A stretch of 64,000 bases of DNA from Podarcis erhardii. Its lineage: Eukaryota. Shown one piece after another: positions 28,599 to 60,860 of this stretch. The notes under the pieces were generated by a model. It saw nothing but the letters and a program-made list of their open reading frames with translations, did no database searches and was not told the origin of the DNA. How positions within the stretch are numbered: the first letter of the stretch is position 1; every line of letters begins with the position of its first letter. The position numbers and the translations under genes were made by a program. The DNA lies in assembly GCA_964252035.1 (NCBI GenBank), contig OZ176201.1; one strand, given 5' to 3'.

Positions 28599-30858
28599 TA
28601 TTTGAAACTGAAAGCTGGCCACACAGGAGAATGGGAAGTGGGAACATGAGAGCCAACCCTTTACTGGGTTTGGGGCACATAGTTTAATCCAGCTACTGAC
28701 ATACCTTAATTACATTAAATTATATTACTTTACATTTTTAAAATGAATTATTTGTGCCACGTTACCAAAGCATGGCTTGTACTTGCCAACTCAGTGTCCC
28801 ATTACTCATCATCAACATCAGGTACACAAACAAACATTCAAGAATTTGTAGTGTTAGATGCCTGGTAACTTTCAGGGAAAATAGAACACTTCTAGGCAGA
28901 TCTTTCCTAGCCACCAGTCTGTGGTTAATGCAGACTACACAAGATAGAGTGAGCAGGGCAGAATTGATCCCAGGATCATCCCATTGGTCCTAGGAGGAAA
29001 AGTACTGACTAGCAGGAAGGGTCATTTTCTGTTGTTTTGTTAAGAACAAAACAATCCTTCAAAAATAAGTTTGGAATAGGGTGAAAAAAGGATCCATCAC
29101 ACCATTTTCCAAGTTTTTAGATTTTTTCAATAACAAAGACTCAGACTAAGATAAAATAGGAGAGCTTTAAATACTGAGCAGGGTGGAGTTCAGTCTGCTT
29201 TAAGCATTTAAAGCCTCCAACTTGTGAGGAACAATTAACAGATTACTCTCTAACAGCAATTATCTCCATCCTAAACAAAAATGAAAAGAATCCATCATCT
29301 CAGCATCTTATAAACCCTGACTTTGTGGAACCAGCTGGCTAAAATCTGTTAAGCGGTTATTCTCTGTGGAGTGAAATCTCTCAGCAATTCAGTTTAAAAG
29401 GAATGATGCAAACACAGAGGAAGATGGAAAAGAAGGGATGGCAGAGGAAAGAGCGATGAGTGATGTCAGCTGGGAAAGTGATGAGAGTTATAGATTTGTT
29501 ACATAGCAGGGGGACCTAACTGCTGTTGTCAGCTCTAATTATTATTGGGCTCTACCCTAGTCACAGGCATTTTAAAAAAGCATACATTTAAGACAATGTA
29601 TTCTGGCCAAAGACTGCTACAATGACTTAAGAAAAGAGAGGGATGCATGTTGATAGAATTATCATACAGCAGTCATGAAGACAAGAGAGTTTGTGATTGT
29701 CCTAATGCTTTCCTTTTGTCCCAGCGGCTACAAACCATGTGGGTTCTATGCCCTATAAAATGGACATGCCAGGATACAGTGCTACACTTGCACCACTACA
29801 TTAAATAAATAGCACTCTTTGATGTAAAAAAATGTAGAAAGATAGCTAGAAATAAGGTTCTGATTCTCTTTGATCCAAATTAAACCAGCATTTTCAGGAA
29901 ACAACCCGAAACAATGACAGTGCTATTTAAATGCTGGCAATGGCAGCCTAAAAGAAGAGTCGTTTTATGAGTAATGGCAGGAGGTAAATAAATTATGGTT
30001 GAAGGAGGAGTAGGTGTTTAAAAGAAGCAGTCACCTGTTTCTGCTAGTCTCAAGTGCTAGTAACACTTCAAAAAGCATATGTAAATGTTGTTGTAGAATA
30101 TAAAAACCTGGAAATGACTCAATATTCATCAATAGCACTTGAAATATATGCTTGACCCAATCTGACAGATTTCAGTTTGAACATCGTTGCACTTGAGCTG
30201 GCCATGTTTGCACATACCTTAAGTGTAAAAAAAAAAAATCCAGGAGAGAGAAAAGTCAATTAGCATCCCTCACAATTTAAAACAATGTTTATTAGCTTGG
30301 ATAAATCTCATGTAAGATTAAATTGAAGGCCAAATATATCCTTAGAACTAGGTGAGTTAACAATCACATCCAAATTAGTCTCATTTAAAATCATTTGGGT
30401 CGACTATACATGTTATGACAAAAGGAAATAATTTTCATAACCTTTTCCATTTCTTGTACCTACTGAGAGGAATTTCACATAAGCAAAGCCACCAGCTATC
30501 ATTCAAGTGTACACTTAAAAGGAAACGGCTAGTAATGGCAACTCTCTGATAAATGTACCTGTCAGATCCATATTTTTAGAAACACTCTTCACACTTTCAA
30601 AAGTAGAGGATGAAGCAGTCCTGTGGATCAACAAATACAAGAGATCTTCTGGATTAGTTGATCACTAGAAACCCAGATGAAGCTGGTGGCACACCAACCA
30701 TCTAACATATCAGTTTTAAACTCATTTACTTTGAAGCAAGCAAACTCATTTCAAAGGGGCTCATTTCCAAATTGTGGAATTAGGATCACATTTTAAGTTA
30801 AATTAGAATCCAGAGCTTCGAAGTATTTTCATTTTCAAGTATCAACGTACATTTATAA

Positions 30859-30864
30859 TTTATT
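30859..30864 (-). terminator. Candidate distal poly(A) signal (AATAAA on - strand) for the exon-14b isoform
   Basis: tttatt on + strand in an AU-rich, UTR-end-like context about 2.6 kb past the 14b stop. Confidence 0.5.
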
Positions 30865-33453
30865 CTTGCACACAACGATTTTTTCAGTTATACAATCTTG
30901 TAAATAGAAACTACTGTTATCACAGTATATTTAGATGTAGCCTATAAAAATATCTACTATACATAAAATATTTAGCCACAGTTTTACAGCACGTTGAGAA
31001 ATATGAAGGGGGAGGGGGAGAGAAAGCAAATACTTCTGGTTAAGAAAAGGCTAGAAGAAAATGCTACACCCGCCAATGAAGGCTAACTTGCAGGCTTAGC
31101 TAACTCAGAGGAGAACATTTTCTTACAGGAATCACATTTACCACTTAAAATCCAAAGTTATACCTGCACAATTTCCTGCTCATTAATCCTCAACTTTACA
31201 AGGATGAAATCAAGCCCACTAAGTAGCCAATAATAATAATAATTACTTGTGGCTCACATCTAGAGAAGTTAGGGCTAGGCTGTTGACACGAATCATCTGT
31301 GATTTAAGCCATTACCCAAAATCCCCTTCTCCAGCTGACACTGTACTGTGGGCCAACAGCAGAATGCTCCCTTTTCATCTACTCCAGTAAGTAGTGATCT
31401 ACCTGAATAAATACATTATGATGTCAAGGCATATTATCTTAAAGGATGGAGTACAGCTAAAGCGCTTTTGAAGTGTTTGATAGTTTAACATAGTCCTTTT
31501 TATGTTTCTGAAATAAGGTTGGCTTTATGGCTTATCTCCAGAACGCTGAATATATTGCTAAGCTACCTTATTAAAGAAATAAAGAACACGGCAGTATGTT
31601 ATATTATAGCACCCAGCCACATAAACGAGTCCCCACTTGGCAAAGCTTACATAGTCCATTGCAGAGAACTCTTAACATTAACAGCATGGCAAGGTTTGAT
31701 GAGGTACCAGCACAGACAGCAAGGCAAAAAAGCATTCAAATCACACGGGACAAAGTTTTCTTCAGTTCAAGAACAAACAGGCACCTAATCTGCTGCTTGC
31801 TGATTTGTATCACATGGACAGATTATTTACACTACACGCTGGCTTAGTACAACAAACACAACTGGCCTAACATGCATGAAGTTTTATCACTAACAGGAAT
31901 TTCTTTCACATGCCTCCCATTCATTGCAACAGGATATATCTGGAGCGTATCCCTGTTGGGTTGTGACCCTAAAGCAGGACTGATCCAATTTCACAAGTTC
32001 ACTTATAGCATAGTATCCCTCTTTGCATATAAATACTTGAAAATCCTAGAGGGCCCTGTTCTTCACTAGGCTCTTGAGCTCCACTCAAGGAATGCACCGA
32101 GGCAAAGATGTGGCTGCTTAAGGTTCACGGAAAGAAAGAATCCTGAGTCCTCTTTTTTGGGGGGGACGGAAGATTGTTTCTATTTATGAATGTGCAAATC
32201 CTGTTCTCATCAATAAAGTAAAAGATATGCAATAAAGGATCGCTTTCATCTTACCCATCCAATGCATTTTAACTTAAATATCACCAATACATAATAAAAA
32301 CAAAAACCCAAAACAAGTAATACTTCATCTGTGACTTTGGTTCAAGAAGATGGGTAAGAACAAGCTTGCATTAATGCCAATAACTCAGGAGCGCTTCATA
32401 ATAATTTGGTCTCTCTAGTAATTTGTCTTATACCTTCCCTGCACTGTTATTGCCATTCACCTCTGGTAACCACCTAGCACCATGCTAATTGTTTTATTGT
32501 TATTATTATCTGCTCCACTTGGAGCAATGTTTACATTAGTGTCAATTAAAAATCCTCCCTTTTCATAGGCTTCTCTGCTTGGGGTTTGGAGTTTGAGGGG
32601 GTGTAAAAAGGGGAGGAGGACCAGGGAAAACAGTTAAGTAAAATATGCGGTTTTTAATAAGCAGACAAAATAGGTTTGCCGTGTGCATGATGTGGAAAGG
32701 AAACTATTCACATACTTCAAATAATAATAATAACCCAGGAGTTCTGGAACATTTCAAGATAGATGGAATGCATCTGGGAAAATATTACCTATTCTGGCTT
32801 TCCATTAAATGATGTGGAGCCTTTAGTAAAATTACCTAGAAACTAGTGCAGCTACCCAAAAAAAAGAAAGAAAATCAAATGTTTCACTGCAAAGCAATGA
32901 CCTGAAGTGGGCAACACTGCTTGTTGCTAAAATTGATATATTAACTGGATTAATATATCTCACAAGGAGACTGGTGGTACCTTTTGTTGTATACTAAAAT
33001 AAATAGTTGGAAGAATCCTCAGTTGAAGAAACACCTGTTCTATGTTCAGTAAAGATTTTATATATAATATAGGAATAAAACAGGAAATCACAGCAAGAAA
33101 GGCTTAGGAAAGTATTGCAGAAGAAAGTTAAGATACAGCATTAAGAGGGACACCAGCATTTCACACTTTTAACATCCACAGTCGAAGAACAACAGGATAA
33201 AGACAACATATATTAATTTAAAAGCAATTTCATTCTCTGTTCCACAAATACTTGGTCCATTTCAACCTTTAATGCCAACTTTGCCTTGTGCCAGACCCAG
33301 GCAGTTGAAACACCGTCTTCGAGAAGAGGAGTGCATGCATTTCTGTGTTGCTTGGTTTCCTTGAAGGCTGCCTTCATTCTCAGGTCCCTGAGTGGTTTCC
33401 TTAGCACTGCTTCAGCAGTTTGGGACGGTGCTGGCAAGGGGAGGTCAAAGGTG

Positions 33454-33513
33454 CTACAAATGATTAGGTACAGTCCTCAAAGCTTCTTCTCGAGAGCGGC
33501 TAACGCATACATT
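33454..33513 (-). CDS. PFKFB4: PFKFB4 candidate alternative (duplicated) terminal exon 14b (NVCVSRSREEALRTVPNHL*)
   Basis: Strong acceptor gctgtcttttctcttttcag, phase 0, 60 nt like exon 14a, 12/19 amino acids identical, stop at the same position. Confidence 0.85.
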   Translation of the reverse strand, partial: NVCVSRSREEALRTVPNHL

Positions 33514-34473
33514 CTGAAAAGAGAAAAGACAGCAAGCTTTATATACTTCACTCAAACACAATGCTTGCCCTTTGGCCAATTCCTGAACACTTCTCACTAC
33601 CTATAGGCTTTCCTTTGCTAGTTCATGGAAATATGGTGAAATTAAGGCTGTAATCCTATGCACATTTACTTTAGCAAAAGACCCACCAACATCAGTGAAG
33701 GCTTGCTTCCCAGAAAATGTGCATAGAGTTGGGTTGGATAAAATCACAATATTTTGTCTTATCTGGTTCCTCTATATATTCAAGCGTTGTAACAAGTTCC
33801 ATCATTCCGGAATACATTTCTCAATATGCATCTGTCTTCAGTTCCATTGTTCTGAAAACCAGCTTATCAGAAACTCAAAGAGATTCCAATGTGGGTTTAG
33901 TTGCACTTTGAATGCTTGGTCTTAGACCTCTGGGCCCCTCATGTAGCCCTAGGTATAAGTCTGTTTTTTTTCCAGTGTTCACTGGGAACTACCAACATAA
34001 GCACATGCTGCTAGCTGATTGGACAACCCAAATGAAGTGTTTTCATTATCACAGTCAGTGCAATGACACATGCACAAGTCCAGGAGGGAGAGATCCTTGA
34101 GAGTCACAAGTCTGAACCCAGCTACAATGCCTATACACAATACTCTTCCTTCCCTTTAAACCAATAACTTTATTAGGCAACAAGCTATGTAATACTACCA
34201 CCTCTCATCACAGATAAGATATGTCATGACACATTGAACACTCAACATACTAGTCTTCAGGCATTCCAGTGACATGTGAAAACAACAAGCAAGCAGAGGC
34301 AAATTGCTAAGCTCCGGCTCCATCACCCTCCATAAGTTGGGATGTTAAACATCTGAAGCAGACAACCTCCTACAGTCATGGAGGCTTCCAGCATGATTAA
34401 GGACCCAGGAAGATAAAGGTTTGAAATTGCTTAAAGAAGCCTCCACAGATACAAGAGGTTGTACATGTTAGAT

Positions 34474-34608
34474 CAGTTTTCTCAACCTTAGGTTTCCAGA
34501 TGTTGGACTACAACTCCCATCATCCTTAGCTAGCAGGACCAGTGGTCAGGGATGATGGGAGTTGTAGCCCAGCAACATCTTGGTGACTCAAGTGTTGAGG
34601 AAAACAGT
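34474..34608. mobile_element. Older copy of the short hAT-type MITE (actacaactcccatcatcc / gggatgatgggagttgtag core)
   Basis: Internal inverted repeats similar to 36050-36185; other decayed relatives near 21290-21420, 40650-40780 and 53000-53145. Confidence 0.7.
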
Positions 34609-34882
34609 GGGTGAAGCTTAGTGCACTTCTCCCCTCTTGCAAGTTGTTTTTACACACAAGTAGAATGTCTGAACAACCAGAAATTACCCTTCAGGGACTC
34701 AAAGGCTGCCAATTGCAAATCTCTATCCTAGAAGCTCAGTCTATCCTAGACTACAGTCATTCTAGCAGCTGCCATTGGATGCAAGTTGCTACCTGATCCT
34801 TGAGGTCAAGTTAAACCGCCCTACATAGTTTTTGCTCAGGCCAAAAAAAGCCATTTATATATAGGCTTTGTGTTACCAGATC

Positions 34883-35068
34883 AGGGCTATTGGACAAGGT
34901 AGATCCCATGCATTGTATGCAGAAGATCCCAAGTTCAATCCCTGAGATCTCAGCTAATGGGCAATACAAAATACCTCTGACTGTGACCTTAGAGAGCTAC
35001 TGCAATACTGGACTTACATGGACCAAGAGCCTGATCTAATATGCAGCAGCTTCCAACATTCCTTACAC
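34883..35068 (+). mobile_element. Decayed Squam-type SINE
   Basis: B-box-like cccaagttcaatccctg and tail similar to 39405-39568. Confidence 0.6.
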
Positions 35069-35881
35069 ATTTTCAAACTCCTATTGGAGTTTTCAAAGTT
35101 TGTCCTGTCCAACTGCATCCGATACTCAACTCTTCCGCACAATATGAACATTTTGTCCTGTTAATGAGCCAAACAGACATGTACCCAAGGAGCTCTAATG
35201 AGTGCCCCAATGATCTTTACCTACCATCAAGCACACCATCATTTTATTCTAAAAACCTGAACCAACTTTTCTCCACCATCAGAAGTGGTACATCTCCCCA
35301 AAAGCGAGATTTCCAGGTAACAGATTTGGGAGCAGTGAACTCATCTCTTTGCAGGAGAAATGAGTCATCCTACTCGTCAATGGAAGTATGAAACACAAAT
35401 GTGTAAGGCACCCTAATGATTATACCTGCTCCAGTGTAGGTTTGCATGGTTCGTGGCAACTTTTAAGAAAATTGCTGCTAATACGTTTTCCATTTATCTA
35501 CACATCAACTTCTACAAACTGACTACCTGGTGCAGAACAGAGATCAAAGAAGTAAGAAGATGACATTCATATGACCCCTGTGTTTTCCGCAAGGCCTGCT
35601 AGCCACTAGCAGTATAACAGTTGTTGTTGTTTTTCTCCTCCTCGGAGATTACAAAAAAAATGAGCTGTTATTCTACCCTTAAGTGAAATAGATAGGTTTC
35701 AGTTAACAAGAATGAACTAAATCTCTTAGAATGAAGACGTTGGTAGTATCCATACTCTTCAAACACAAAATGTGAGGTGAGAACACACATTCTTATCAAA
35801 AGGGCTCTTGATTTAATCTGCTAGGGTTTCATACTACATAGCCTGATCTTCCAGATCCTCTCTTCCCTGTATTACCTTGAC

Positions 35882-36185
35882 CAGGCATAGGCAAACTCGG
35901 CCCTCCAGATGTTTTGGTACTACAACTCCCATGATCATAACATCTTTCCACCCACCTGCTGGTGCCATTAAGTTAAAGAAAACAAAATGGAGAGAGTGAT
36001 ACCACCCACTTAGGCAGGCCAAAGTTCAGTGTCTCCCATCTTCTAGGGTCAGGTATCCCCAAACTCGGCCCTCCAGCTGTTTTGGAACTACAACTCCCAT
36101 CATCCCTAGCTAACAGGACCAGTGGTCAGGGATGATGGGAATTGTAGTCCCAAAACATCTGGAGGGCCGAGTTTGCCTATGCCTG
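35882..36185. mobile_element. Composite hAT-type MITE with internal third end
   Basis: TIRs caggcataggcaaactcggccctccagatgttttgg and its reverse complement; 8-bp TSD accttgac at 35874-35881 and 36186-36193; extra left-end-like sequence at 36050. Confidence 0.85.
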
Positions 36186-37203
36186 ACCTTGACTATTATC
36201 CAGGAAAGACATGAGATCCCTAATCAAAGCACTGTAGAGTGTTACAGGTCTTGCATCTGGCCTTTGAGATTGACATCACTTAAACATCTTAATGGAATCC
36301 AAGATATACATAGATACATAAGTCTTAACCCGTCCAGAAGAACAAAAAATCCAGTATTTAGGACCTTTTCTTTCCGTTCTCAAATGCAAGACCTGCTAGA
36401 GATTCACAAGGATATGTGCTCCTTTCCCTTACTTTGCCATGAGATATCACCATAATCATGATATCGATCTTACAAAACTAAAACTCCTGGATTTAAGCCA
36501 GGGGGGTTAACCTTTTCCAGCCAAGGGCTGCACTGACCCATGCCCAATGCTGTGAGAAGCATGGCAAAGTGGGCTAAGGCCAAAGAAGGAAATTAATCCC
36601 TTTTATTATCTTTCCATCTAAAATCAACCCATTTCTTTCCTTCCCCAATTCATTCTATTTGTATTTTCTTTTATATACTTTTAACTGATTGTTTTCCCTC
36701 AAAGTCCCACTTCCCCCACTCAAAATTCCCACAAATTCATTTTATTTATTCCCTGTGATGCTGATGCCATTGGTTTTCTTTGTTCTGTTGAAGCAGGGAG
36801 GGGAGAGAAATTGCCAAAAACGTTTCAAATAAGAAGCCATCAAATCTCTTAGCTGATGGGTTGGCCACTCCTGATCTAAGCAATGTAACCATCAGCACCA
36901 CCAAAGCTGATTCTCCAGCCCCAACCCCCAACATGATCTTAGTCTAGTGAAAATCGGTTGAACAAAGCAAGTGCCTCTGCTGGGGGAGAGGCTGTTCCTG
37001 GGAACATCTCTGGCCCCTATAATAGTTTTGTTTATATGTGGCAATGCAGGATTCAAGTGACAACCTTTTTCTAATCTACCAAACCTGTTTACAAGATGCT
37101 TAGAATTTAGAGTATGTAAGTTAGCAGCAGCTACACTGCTTTGGTTTGGTTTTGTGAATCACCCTGGGAATTATTTGGCTGGCAGGAAGTATGAAATGAT
37201 TTA

Positions 37204-37447
37204 CAGTGGTATACCTCGGATTACATATGCTTCAGGTTACATATGCTTCAGGTTACAGACTCTGCTAACACAGAAATAGTACCTCGGGTTAAGAACTTTA
37301 CCTCAGGATGAGAACAGAAATCATGCTCCAGTGGTGCGGCGGCAGTGGGAGGCCCCATTAGCTAAAGTGGTGCTTCAGGTTAAGAACAGTTTCAGGTTAA
37401 GAACGGAACTCTGGAACAAATTAAGTACGTAACCCGAGGTACCACTG
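37204..37447. mobile_element. Tc1/mariner-type MITE (same subfamily as 61830-62082)
   Basis: cagtggtatacctc...gaggtaccactg, TA TSD. Confidence 0.88.
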
Positions 37448-38966
37448 TATTTATTTTTTTAAGTATTGCAGTTTACTGGCCCACATATGGGAAAGCTCCA
37501 CCTTTTTCTTTTTGGAATTTTAGAGCATCATCTTGAGGCACAAATGCTATTGTGTGCACTAGAATGTTTCTTCTCAGCCCGCTGCTTTCAAATCTCCAAG
37601 GAGGTAGATTTATGTCAGGGGTTGGGAACTTTACGCCTGAGGGCTTCTCTGTCTGGGTCTCAAGACTCTCCTCAGGCTCCTCCTCTTCCTCCTCAGCAAC
37701 ATACCCTCTCTCCCCAGGCTACACCCCTGCCCAACTTTGCACCATCTACAGCAGCGGGGAAAGGAGTAGTTTTGTATTATTCCTTTCCACAAGTGCCATT
37801 TCTTTACTCCATATTGACAGTGGTTCTATCCAGAAGTGTTCCAAATGCATGTTTACCCTGGTATTAGTAATGTCTAGTAACTTCACGGGAGTAAGCAATA
37901 GCAGTTTGCCTCCGTTTGCCAAACCGTAGAAGAAATATATTTCTATGTTTCTACTTTATAAAGAAAACAAATAAAGACATTACGACTACGAGTCCTCATC
38001 ATATAAATTGTAAATTAGGGCTTCTACCCAATTAAAAATACCTTAGTTGACTGATTGAATCTTATTGATTAGCGGACTAAAATTCATGCCATTCCCAGAA
38101 ATTGCATCTGAACAGAATAAAAGAGTCCTGAAGCAAGAAACATATTTCTTTTGTTCTTATATAACGTTTAGCTTTGTTATAGCAGGCAACTTCTTAGAAG
38201 AGGCATTCCTTCTCGTGTGAACGAAAAGAGAAAGGCCTCTTTTAAATGGGTGTTTAAAACAGTCTTAACACCACCTGTAGTTTTTTTTTTTAAAACTAAC
38301 AATATTTTAAAAATAGCTTCTAAAAATTAGCTGTCAAAGTAATTAGAAGAACAAATTAAACTTTAAATAATCAATTAATCCCATAATAGATTAAATTTTG
38401 CAGAACTTTTTTTGAAATCACAGAAATACATCTTCCACAAAGTCAGGGGCAAGAACACTATTTCCCACAAGCTACTATTAAACAGCCATAGAATTCTATG
38501 GTTCTATGAATTAGCAGACTATCTACATTGCCGATACTATTCACTAGCTGTGAAACTAACTGTAGAAAGACTATTAATTATGCTCCTCTATGTAAAACAA
38601 TCCAATCACTCAAGAGAAAATAAAAATACTCATTAATAGACAACTGCCCCATATTATCTCCCAACAGGGTTTGAGTGTTTGATCAAGCTGTAATGGAGAT
38701 AAAACATCAGGTTTAAAATTAGCAATCACCAATTGATCAAGTGTTATATCAGAGAAGCCAGTAATCAGATGGCTCAGCCAATTAGTTCCAATGCAGGGGG
38801 TAGGGGACAATAAGATTTGATTGTTTCATTTCTAAAAGCCACGAGCTACACAAAAACTGGTATTATCTGTGGATGATTCCAAAGTGATTGGAACAATTGA
38901 AATAATTTTAATATAATATGATGAAAAGAAGCACCACACGTTTCATAGCTGATCAGGACACAGGCT

Positions 38967-60860
<21,894 letters not shown>

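What the first reader, a model, noticed from the sequence alone, without database searches (positions are those of the whole stretch)
33454..33513. Duplicated, intact alternative terminal exon of PFKFB4 (14b) with its own putative 3' UTR
Seen: 5.5 kb downstream of exon 14a ([19 protein letters not shown]) is a second 60-nt unit behind a strong acceptor (gctgtcttttctcttttcag) in the same phase 0, reading NVCVSRSREEALRTVPNHL*. By hand count 12/19 residues are identical but only 34/60 nucleotides, and 7 of the 12 conserved residues use different synonymous codons, including Ser TCA vs AGC. It is absent from the ORF track. A putative UTR runs about 2.6 kb to AATAAA at 30859-30864. Inference: an ancient exon duplication kept under purifying selection, giving two alternative last exons that switch the C-terminal tail (new Cys, basic RSR, Ser) and the whole 3' UTR. 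Established: PFKFB C-terminal tails modulate the kinase/phosphatase balance. I do not recall this exon in human PFKFB4, but it may already be annotated in non-mammalian gene models.
Basis: partly seen in the sequence, partly recalled or inferred. Interest (0 to 1): 0.85.

Follow-up and report, generated by a model that had tools for sequence, protein, structure and literature searches.

The report
Known alternative last exon of PFKFB4
The lizard PFKFB4 gene has a second, expressed copy of its last coding exon that gives the glycolysis-regulating enzyme a different 19-residue tail, but this old exon is already in public gene models of lizards, snakes, birds, turtles, frogs and fishes.

Summary
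At 33454-33513 (minus strand) a 60-nt unit behind a strong acceptor reads NVCVSRSREEALRTVPNHL*. It matches the canonical last exon (38967-39026) at 12/19 residues and 34/60 bases, far beyond chance.

The reading as an old, selected alternative last exon is supported.
- RNA contigs from close Podarcis relatives cover the exon and about 1 kb of 3' UTR, and stop sharply at the acceptor. Their depth is 4-10 times that of exon 14a.
- The break points of the assembly graph fit a direct exon 13 to 14b splice. That junction itself was not read.
- Lizard versus hummingbird 14b differs at 13 of about 14 synonymous sites but only 3 of about 43 nonsynonymous sites.

It is not new. NCBI models already carry this tail: Ahaetulla XP_058030118.1 is identical, and Crotalus, Anolis, Sphaerodactylus, birds, turtles, frogs and teleosts have it too. 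The Podarcis, Crotalus and Calypte gene ranges end exactly at the 14b stop codon. None of 111 sampled placental-mammal models has it.

Two corrections. The UTR is about 0.9-1.1 kb, not 2.6 kb. In one run, 14a is also an 87-nt internal exon spliced to 14b, which then serves as UTR.

The scan has not noted this exon on other DNA.

The parts
44285..44349 (-). PFKFB4 exon 13 (...[22 protein letters not shown]). It ends in phase 0 with CAG|gtaggt and is the shared donor for both tail exons.
   Evidence: translation and flanking splice signals. tblastn of PFKFB4 proteins.
38967..39026 (-). Exon 14a coding part, the canonical type A tail [19 protein letters not shown], with stop TGA at 38967-38969.
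   Evidence: Identical to the tails of Podarcis and many other vertebrates.
38940..39026 (-). 14a-short: an 87-nt internal-exon form of 14a. The donor AAC|GTGTGG lies after 38940, 27 nt past the stop codon, and is spliced to 33513.
   Evidence: joint 33513/38940 with GT..AG on the minus strand. It rests on one 141-nt contig of depth 16.9 in run X15. One search gives the sequence. The donor is conserved in Podarcis but not in Crotalus or Calypte.
38337..39026 (-). 14a-long: the terminal-exon form with its own 3' UTR. The 3' end is not fixed.
   Evidence: contigs 38337/38376-39031, depth 6-8, in X6 and X25, plus 38386-38924 in X15. No canonical AATAAA lies near the contig ends.
33514..33533 (-). 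Polypyrimidine tract and AG acceptor of exon 14b (gctgtcttttctcttttcag).
   Evidence: RNA contigs stop at 33513 or 33516. The acceptor is conserved in Podarcis.
33454..33513 (-). Exon 14b coding part, the type B tail NVCVSRSREEALRTVPNHL, with stop TAG at 33454-33456.
   Evidence: Identical peptide in Ahaetulla prasina XP_058030118.1 (P0277) and in the Podarcis loci. Purifying selection.
32396..33453 (-). 3' UTR of the 14b exon, about 0.8-1.1 kb. Candidate poly(A) signals are ATTAAA 32653-32658 and AATAAA 32493-32498.
   Evidence: RNA runs hold 0.33-0.37 of 30800-33520, about 1 kb. (signals). (contig lengths place the ends near 32634, 32691 and 32396). (sequence).

Best explanation
Exon 14b is a genuine, expressed alternative last coding exon of PFKFB4. 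It arose by an ancient tandem duplication of the terminal exon and has been kept by selection on the peptide it encodes. Splicing exon 13 (donor at 44285) to the acceptor at 33513 skips 14a. The enzyme is then identical through ...NTHRDKPQ but ends in the type B tail NVCVSRSREEALRTVPNHL instead of the type A tail [19 protein letters not shown], and it has a different 3' UTR of about 1 kb.

The choice is made by competition between two routes. One is the proximal 14a acceptor with its own 3' end. The other is the distal 14b acceptor. In lacertids a third outcome exists: 14a is kept as an 87-nt internal exon, with its stop 27 nt before the junction, and 14b then serves only as 3' UTR.

By inference, the tail swap retunes the C-terminal regulatory end of the bisphosphatase domain. 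The conserved core E-E/D-A-L-x-T-V-P-x-H is kept. The Pro-Pro of type A is replaced in type B by a conserved hydroxyl or basic pair (R-S-R-E, R-S-S-E, R-T-T-E), which may be a phospho-acceptor.

Shown here: the sequence, expression, the acceptor boundary, the 14a-to-14b joint, conservation, selection and existing annotation. Inferred: the direct 13-to-14b junction in this lineage and the biochemical effect.
For: Sequence and statistics.

Expression:
- Contigs of depth 87, 33 and 28 in X6, X15 and X25 cover 33080 up to 33513/33516 and end there. The intron just upstream is at 0-9.
- Exon 14a has depth only 6-8.
- That intron and other silent stretches at zero depth argue against DNA contamination.

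Assembly-graph evidence for the exon 13 to 14b junction (sequences):
- All three 14a contigs carry exactly 24 nt of exon 13 (19 unaligned plus 5 matching by coincidence).
- A 31-mer graph breaks there only if a second junction sharing the first 6 nt AATGTA exists, and 14b starts with AATGTA.
- The 14b contig ends at 33516 (CAG is shared by exon 13 and the intron) in X6 and X25.
- It ends at 33513 in X15, the run where the 14a-short to 14b joint is present.

Annotation:
- B-type tails occur in NCBI models of Ahaetulla (identical), Crotalus tigris X2, Anolis sagrei X1, Sphaerodactylus X2, many birds and turtles, Xenopus, Bombina, Pelodytes, Ambystoma and teleosts.
- Isoform pairs are identical up to the tail.
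- The gene ranges in two Podarcis genomes, Crotalus and Calypte end exactly at the 14b stop, with 14a lying 3-5.8 kb upstream.

Selection:
- Lizard versus hummingbird: 13/14.2 synonymous against 3/42.8 nonsynonymous differences.
- Lizard versus rattlesnake: 3 synonymous against 1 nonsynonymous.

Background: PFKFB terminal regions hold the regulatory parts, and C-terminal splice variation is known in PFKFB2, PFKFB3 and rat PFKFB4 (PMC4178209; PMC13446353).
Against: - No read or contig spanning exon 13 to 14b was seen directly. The 6-kb limit kept exon 13 off the laid stretch, and the junction is inferred from contig break points, depth and relatives' gene models.
- The RNA runs come from close relatives (about 1-2% diverged; X6 matches Podarcis locus L001 at 8 of 9 variant sites), not from the window's own species. 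They are labelled 'RNA?'.
- The one splice actually seen into 33513 comes from 14a-short, where 14b is untranslated.
- Contig word depth is a poor measure of isoform ratios.
- Gene models from automatic pipelines are not protein evidence.
- Nothing here measures enzyme activity.
Confidence: 0.85

Rival explanations
1. The 33513 exon is mainly a 3'-UTR exon. Transcripts keep 14a (stop included), use the weak donor after 38940 and splice to 33513, so the protein is always type A and the B reading frame is rarely translated.
For:: the only splice directly seen into 33513 is 38940 to 33513 (GT..AG, depth 16.9 in X15). The stop lies 27 nt before the junction, so such an mRNA should escape nonsense-mediated decay (the established 50-55 nt rule).
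Against: The joint appears in one of four runs. In X6 and X25 the 14b exon has depth 87 and 28 while 14a has only 8 and 6, with no joint. The 14a donor is GA in Crotalus and TT in Calypte, yet 14b is kept there. A pure UTR exon would not show 13 synonymous against 3 nonsynonymous changes, a fixed 19-codon length and a conserved stop from fishes to birds. The 24-nt break point fits a 13-to-14b junction.
Confidence: 0.08
2. 14b is an unused relic of an old duplication (a pseudo-exon) that merely still looks intact.
For: Nucleotide identity to 14a is low (34/60). No B tail was found in sampled placental mammals, so the exon can evidently be dispensed with.
Against: It is transcribed with a sharp exon boundary at 4-10 times the depth of 14a. 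Frame, length, stop and acceptor are kept in squamates, birds, turtles, amphibians and teleosts. Substitutions are nearly all synonymous.
Confidence: 0.02
3. The exon belongs to a separate transcription unit downstream of PFKFB4, for example a non-coding RNA or a transcript related to the convergent PRKCD gene, and only mimics a PFKFB4 tail.
For: PRKCD lies convergently a few kb downstream in Podarcis and Calypte. The upstream partner of most 14b contigs was not read directly.
Against: The exon is on the PFKFB4 strand, in phase with exon 13 and homologous to 14a. It is physically joined to 14a plus 24 nt of exon 13 in one contig. Public models join it to PFKFB4 in many species.
Confidence: 0.02

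Closest known systems
NCBI gene-model isoforms of non-mammalian PFKFB4 with the B-type tail, for example Ahaetulla prasina XP_058030118.1, Crotalus tigris XP_039204140.1, Anolis sagrei XP_060621878.2, Calypte anna XP_030314161.1 and Xenopus laevis isoform X1
   Same: The same exon. The peptide is identical (Ahaetulla) or differs at 1-4 residues. It sits 3-5.8 kb downstream of the type A exon, follows exon 13 in the same phase, has the same 19-codon length, and the gene ranges end at its stop.
   Different: Nothing essential. The window is simply another lacertid copy. Its own species' annotation was not seen, and the lacertid-specific 14a-short to 14b splice cannot be read from the protein records.
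C-terminal alternative splicing of PFKFB3 (ubiquitous versus inducible forms, exon 15) and PFKFB2 (58 versus 54 kDa, exon 15)
   Same: Isoforms share the catalytic core and differ in the C-terminal regulatory end and 3' UTR through alternative 3' exons (PMC4178209; PMC13446353).
   Different: Those variable exons are not homologous duplicates of each other, and they add or remove long tails carrying known phosphorylation sites. Here two homologous 19-residue tails are swapped one for one.
Rat and human PFKFB4 splice variants with altered C-terminal parts (cited in PMC4178209 and PMC7926708)
   Same: The same gene, with variation at the C-terminal end.
   Different: The mammalian models seen here end in type A or in intron read-through or other non-homologous tails. 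None of the 111 sampled carries a B-type tail.
Rat testis PFKFB4 crystal structures 1BIF, 2BIF and 3BIF
   Same: These are the closest solved relatives of the lizard protein (E about 1e-288, aligned end to end). They carry the mammalian type A tail.
   Different: No structure with a B-type tail was found by sequence search. Which tail residues are ordered was not examined.

Membership tests
PFKFB4 gene (6-phosphofructo-2-kinase/fructose-2,6-bisphosphatase 4) | A 6PF2K kinase domain followed by a His_Phos_1 bisphosphatase domain, with the Walker A motif GLPARGK and the catalytic RHGES motif | tested here: met
   One search finds the motifs in minus-strand exons at 60753-60773 and 53274-53288. 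One search aligns window exons at 78-100% to PFKFB4 proteins. The homologues carry PF01591 and PF00300.
PFKFB4 gene (6-phosphofructo-2-kinase/fructose-2,6-bisphosphatase 4) | Orthology to PFKFB4 rather than PFKFB1, PFKFB2 or PFKFB3 | tested here: met
   The best hits are all named PFKFB4. The window is collinear at about 90-96% identity with the Podarcis PFKFB4 loci. The type A tail is identical to Podarcis PFKFB4.
Alternative last exons from a tandem exon duplication | Two homologous exons in tandem, in the same phase, each with its own acceptor and stop codon | tested here: met
   12/19 residues shared, both preceded by AG, both phase 0, both 19 codons plus a stop.
Alternative last exons from a tandem exon duplication | Each exon has its own 3' UTR and polyadenylation site | tested here: inconclusive
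   RNA contigs run 0.8-1.1 kb past the 14b stop, near ATTAAA and AATAAA signals, and about 0.65 kb past the 14a stop. No poly(A) ends were read, and no canonical signal lies near the ends of the 14a contigs.
Alternative last exons from a tandem exon duplication | The shared upstream exon is spliced to either exon | tested here: inconclusive
   For 13 to 14a, contigs carry 24 nt of exon 13. For 13 to 14b, the evidence is only indirect: the 24-nt break point, the ends at 33516 or 33513, a depth of 87 against 9 for the unspliced intron, and relatives' gene models. The junction was not read.
Alternative last exons from a tandem exon duplication | The two exons are mutually exclusive in mature mRNA | tested here: not met
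   one contig in X15 joins 14a (87 nt) to 14b, so both can occur in one mRNA. In that case 14b is untranslated.
Conserved B-type tail exon of vertebrate PFKFB4 | Orthologous exon with the pattern NV-x-[VI]-x-R-[ST]-x-E-[ED]-A-L-[RQKC]-T-V-P-x-[HN]-[LF]-stop, lying downstream of the type A exon | tested here: met
   (tails). (order A then B in Podarcis, Crotalus and Calypte). (same-gene isoform pairs in Tachysurus, Anolis, Crotalus and ducks).
Conserved B-type tail exon of vertebrate PFKFB4 | Purifying selection on the encoded peptide | tested here: met
   window versus Calypte pS 0.92 against pN 0.07; window versus Crotalus dN/dS about 0.09. The exon is only 57 nt, so the numbers are small.

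The most novel reading that the evidence does not exclude
PFKFB4 of jawed vertebrates has always had two interchangeable C-terminal tails. The B tail is the major form in some lizard tissues. It differs functionally from the A tail, for example through a conserved [ST]-x-E-[ED] acceptor that replaces the Pro-Pro of type A. It was lost in placental mammals, which would explain why it has never been studied biochemically. In lacertids a new donor inside 14a adds a third outcome, in which 14b acts as UTR.
Probability: 0.45. Interest if true: 0.45.

Novelty: already known. Interest (0 to 1): 0.25.

Why it matters
For genome annotation it matters little, because public pipelines already call this exon in many non-mammalian vertebrates, including the window's close relatives. 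It has some value for PFKFB biology. All enzymology and structures of PFKFB4 come from mammals, which in the sampled models have only the A tail. In lizard RNA the B-tail exon appears to be the more abundant 3' end. Three full-text searches found no paper describing the B tail. A direct comparison of the A-tail and B-tail enzymes is therefore an open and easy question about how the kinase/bisphosphatase balance is tuned outside mammals.

Tried and rejected
- Chance resemblance was rejected by the six-frame scan.
- A 2.6-kb UTR was rejected in favour of about 1 kb.
- The representative search mostly returned fragments and mis-spliced models. It served only to obtain a full-length id (P0005).
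- The look-up of encoding contigs found nothing on record for P0277, P0280, P0274, P0273, P0185, P0171 and P0168. It returned no DNA for Bombina and Carcharodon because the genes exceed 100 kb.
- As a result no mammalian, amphibian, fish or shark locus could be inspected at the DNA level. Absence from mammals rests only on protein models.
- Three literature searches found no description of this exon. PMC3294252, on the C-terminal function of PFKFB3, is not held.
- Structure prediction was considered and dropped, because the tool returns no coordinates from which tail contacts could be read.

Full report
**What is in the sequence**

On the minus strand the window carries PFKFB4. The Walker A exon (GLPARGK) lies at about 60.77 kb and the RHGES exon at about 53.28 kb. 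Exon 13 (…[21 protein letters not shown]) ends in phase 0 at 44285 with CAG|gtaggt.

The canonical last exon 14a is 39026-38967 and reads [20 protein letters not shown] second unit lies 5.5 kb further down, at 33513-33454, behind gctgtcttttctcttttcag. It reads NVCVSRSREEALRTVPNHL*.

- 12/19 residues are shared;
- 34/60 bases are shared;
- 7 of the 12 shared residues use different codons.

A BLOSUM62 scan of all 127,882 six-frame positions gives 14b a score of 56 against 22 for the next best hit, and there is no third copy.

**Expression**

Seventeen runs labelled 'RNA?', from three coded organisms, hold 0.33-0.37 of the sampled words of 30800-33520. That is about 1 kb. A similar set of such runs holds 0.15-0.23 of 37400-39030.

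These runs come from close relatives, not the window's own species. Contigs differ from the window by 1-2% in the UTR, and the variants of run X6 match Podarcis locus L001 at 8 of 9 sites.

I laid four runs on 33080-39069.
- In X6, X15 and X25 a contig of depth 87, 33 and 28 covers 33080 up to 33516, 33513 and 33516 respectively, and ends there.
- The intron immediately upstream has depth 0 in X15 and X25. In X6 it has depth 9, from one unspliced contig.
- Other intronic stretches are silent apart from interspersed repeats. The signal is therefore spliced RNA, not DNA.
- Exon 14a with about 650 nt of its own UTR has depth only 6-8.
- Contig lengths put the distal ends of the 14b exon near 32634, 32691 and 32396. 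These lie beside ATTAAA 32653-32658 and AATAAA 32493-32498.

**An unexpected splice**

In X15 one 141-nt contig (depth 16.9) joins 38940 to 33513, with GT..AG on the minus strand. It consists of 24 nt of exon 13, 87 nt of 14a and 30 nt of 14b. So 14a can act as an internal exon. Its donor AAC|GTGTGG lies 27 nt after the stop codon, and 14b is then only 3' UTR.

By the established 50-55 nt rule, such an mRNA should not be a target of nonsense-mediated decay. The donor is conserved in both Podarcis loci. It reads GA in Crotalus and TT in Calypte, so this route looks lineage-specific.

**Is exon 13 spliced directly to 14b?**

I could not read that junction. Exon 13 lies 10.8 kb from 14b, the tool takes 6 kb, and there was only one call. 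Three indirect lines support it.

(a) Break points in exon 13. Logan contigs come from a 31-mer graph and break where paths diverge. All three contigs that enter 14a carry exactly 24 nt of exon 13: 19 unaligned plus 5 that match the intron end by coincidence. A break at 24 rather than 30 nt is expected only if a second junction shares the first six bases after exon 13. 14a and 14b both begin with AATGTA.

(b) Break points at 14b. The 14b contig ends at 33516 in X6 and X25, because the intron and exon 13 both end in CAG. It ends at 33513 in X15, where the 14a-short path, which ends in AAC, is also present.

(c) Depth. In X6 the depth entering 14b (87) cannot be supplied by the unspliced path (9) or by 14a (8).

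**Conservation and existing annotation**

A representative search gave a full-length turtle PFKFB4 model. Two database searches and two cluster look-ups followed. The B-type tail is widely annotated:

| Group | Example | Tail |
|---|---|---|
| Snake | Ahaetulla prasina X3, XP_058030118.1 | NVCVSRSREEALRTVPNHL (identical to the window) |
| Snake | Crotalus tigris X2 | ...TVPNNL |
| Lizard | Anolis sagrei X1 | NVCVNRSRDEALRTVPNHL |
| Gecko | Sphaerodactylus X2 | NVCITRSREEALKTVPNHL |
| Birds and turtles | many | NVGVDRSREEALRTVPNHL |
| Frogs | Xenopus, Pelodytes, Eleutherodactylus | NVDVDRSSEDALQTVPNHL |
| Salamander | Ambystoma | NVDVDRTTEDALQTVPNHL |
| Teleosts | several | NVNVHRTTEDALQTVPPHL and variants |
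| Shark | Carcharodon | related but longer tail |

Isoform pairs of one gene are identical up to the tail. This holds for Tachysurus X3/X4, Anolis X1/X2, Crotalus X1/X2 and a duck pair.

At the DNA level, two Podarcis genomes, Crotalus tigris and Calypte anna all have 14a followed 3-5.8 kb later by 14b, each behind an AG. In all four the annotated gene range ends exactly at the 14b stop codon.

Type A is almost invariant from shark to mammals. Type B varies more but keeps its length, its stop and the core E-[ED]-A-L-x-T-V-P-x-H.

**Selection**

Nei-Gojobori counts are as follows.

| Comparison for 14b | Synonymous differences | Nonsynonymous differences |
|---|---|---|
| Window vs hummingbird | 13 of 14.2 sites | 3 of 42.8 sites |
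| Window vs rattlesnake | 3 | 1 |

Between 14a and 14b within a species, synonymous sites are saturated (pS 0.65-0.82) while pN is 0.34-0.37. This is the pattern of an old duplication with both peptides under constraint. The exon is short, so these are small numbers.

**Mammals**

No B-type tail ranked among the best 120 cluster representatives when only the last 42 residues of a B-type protein were scored. Of 111 sampled members of ten placental-mammal PFKFB4 clusters, 66 end in type A, 45 in read-through or truncated forms, and none in type B.

I could not obtain a mammalian locus. 'Lost in placental mammals' is therefore a tentative statement based on gene models only. Monotremes and marsupials remain unchecked.

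**Mechanism**

Shown: there are two homologous terminal coding exons, and both are expressed. The distal one has the higher contig depth in three runs. There are at least three mRNA forms: 13-14a-long, 13-14a-short-14b, and by inference 13-14b.

Inferred: the outcome depends on whether the 14a acceptor is used. If it is, the outcome then depends on whether cleavage or the weak internal donor follows.

The protein consequence is a one-for-one swap of the last 19 residues. Reviews place the regulatory regions of PFKFB enzymes at the N- and C-terminal ends. They also describe C-terminal splice variation in PFKFB2, PFKFB3 and rat PFKFB4 (PMC4178209; PMC13446353; PMC7926708).

From the alignment of tails, type B replaces the Pro-Pro (or Met-Pro) of type A by R-S-R-E, R-S-S-E or R-T-T-E. 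That gives a conserved Ser/Thr with an acidic residue at +2 or +3. Whether it is phosphorylated, or changes the kinase/bisphosphatase balance, is untested speculation on my part.

**Novelty and verdict**

It is also already present in public gene models of the window's nearest relatives and across non-mammalian vertebrates. The finding is therefore 'already known' at the annotation level.

Three full-text searches found no paper that describes or characterises the B tail. The lacertid 14a-short to 14b splice and the apparent dominance of the 14b 3' end in lizard RNA are minor additions.

Nothing on PFKFB4 had been noted elsewhere.

Noticed in passing
window 43868-44053: A run of 186 N in intron 13 of PFKFB4, about 230 nt downstream of exon 13.
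   Followed up: no
window 34480-34679, 35880-36279, 37080-37479 (also 40791-41140): Segments of the 14a-14b intron have contig depth of 10^3 to 10^5 in all four RNA runs, with many chimeric joints and loose ends. They match many other places in the Podarcis loci at 74-92% identity. These are interspersed repeats that are abundant in transcriptomes, not part of the PFKFB4 mRNA.
   Followed up: partly
window 30800-33079 (run X17, organism C): X17 holds 0.33 of the sampled words of 30800-33520 but has zero depth on 33080-33679 and on 14a. What it holds must lie further downstream. This is unexplained.
   Followed up: no
L001 85344-87194, L002 84536-86632, L004 63350-68071: A convergent protein kinase C gene (685 aa; C2, C1, Pkinase and Pkinase_C domains; PRKCD-like) ends about 5-8 kb beyond the 14b stop in Podarcis and in the hummingbird.
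   Followed up: partly
window 38938-38940; L003 about 85557; L004 about 53457: The donor used by the 14a-short form (AAC|GT) is kept in both Podarcis genomes. It reads GA in Crotalus and TT in Calypte, so the 14a-to-14b splice may be a lacertid novelty.
   Followed up: partly
protein clusters (P0433, P0483, P0486, P0500, P0505, P0507, P0513): Mammalian PFKFB4 clusters at 90% identity also contain collagen VII-PFKFB4 fusion models and shisa-5 proteins. These are probably read-through or merged gene models of neighbouring genes.
   Followed up: no
proteins P0311-P0353 (tails): Fish 'PFKFB1-like' tails (NVDVDREPEEALLTVPDHI and similar) score closer to the PFKFB4 B tail than the A tail does. The two tail types might therefore predate the split of the PFKFB paralogues. 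With only 19 residues this is too short to decide.
   Followed up: no
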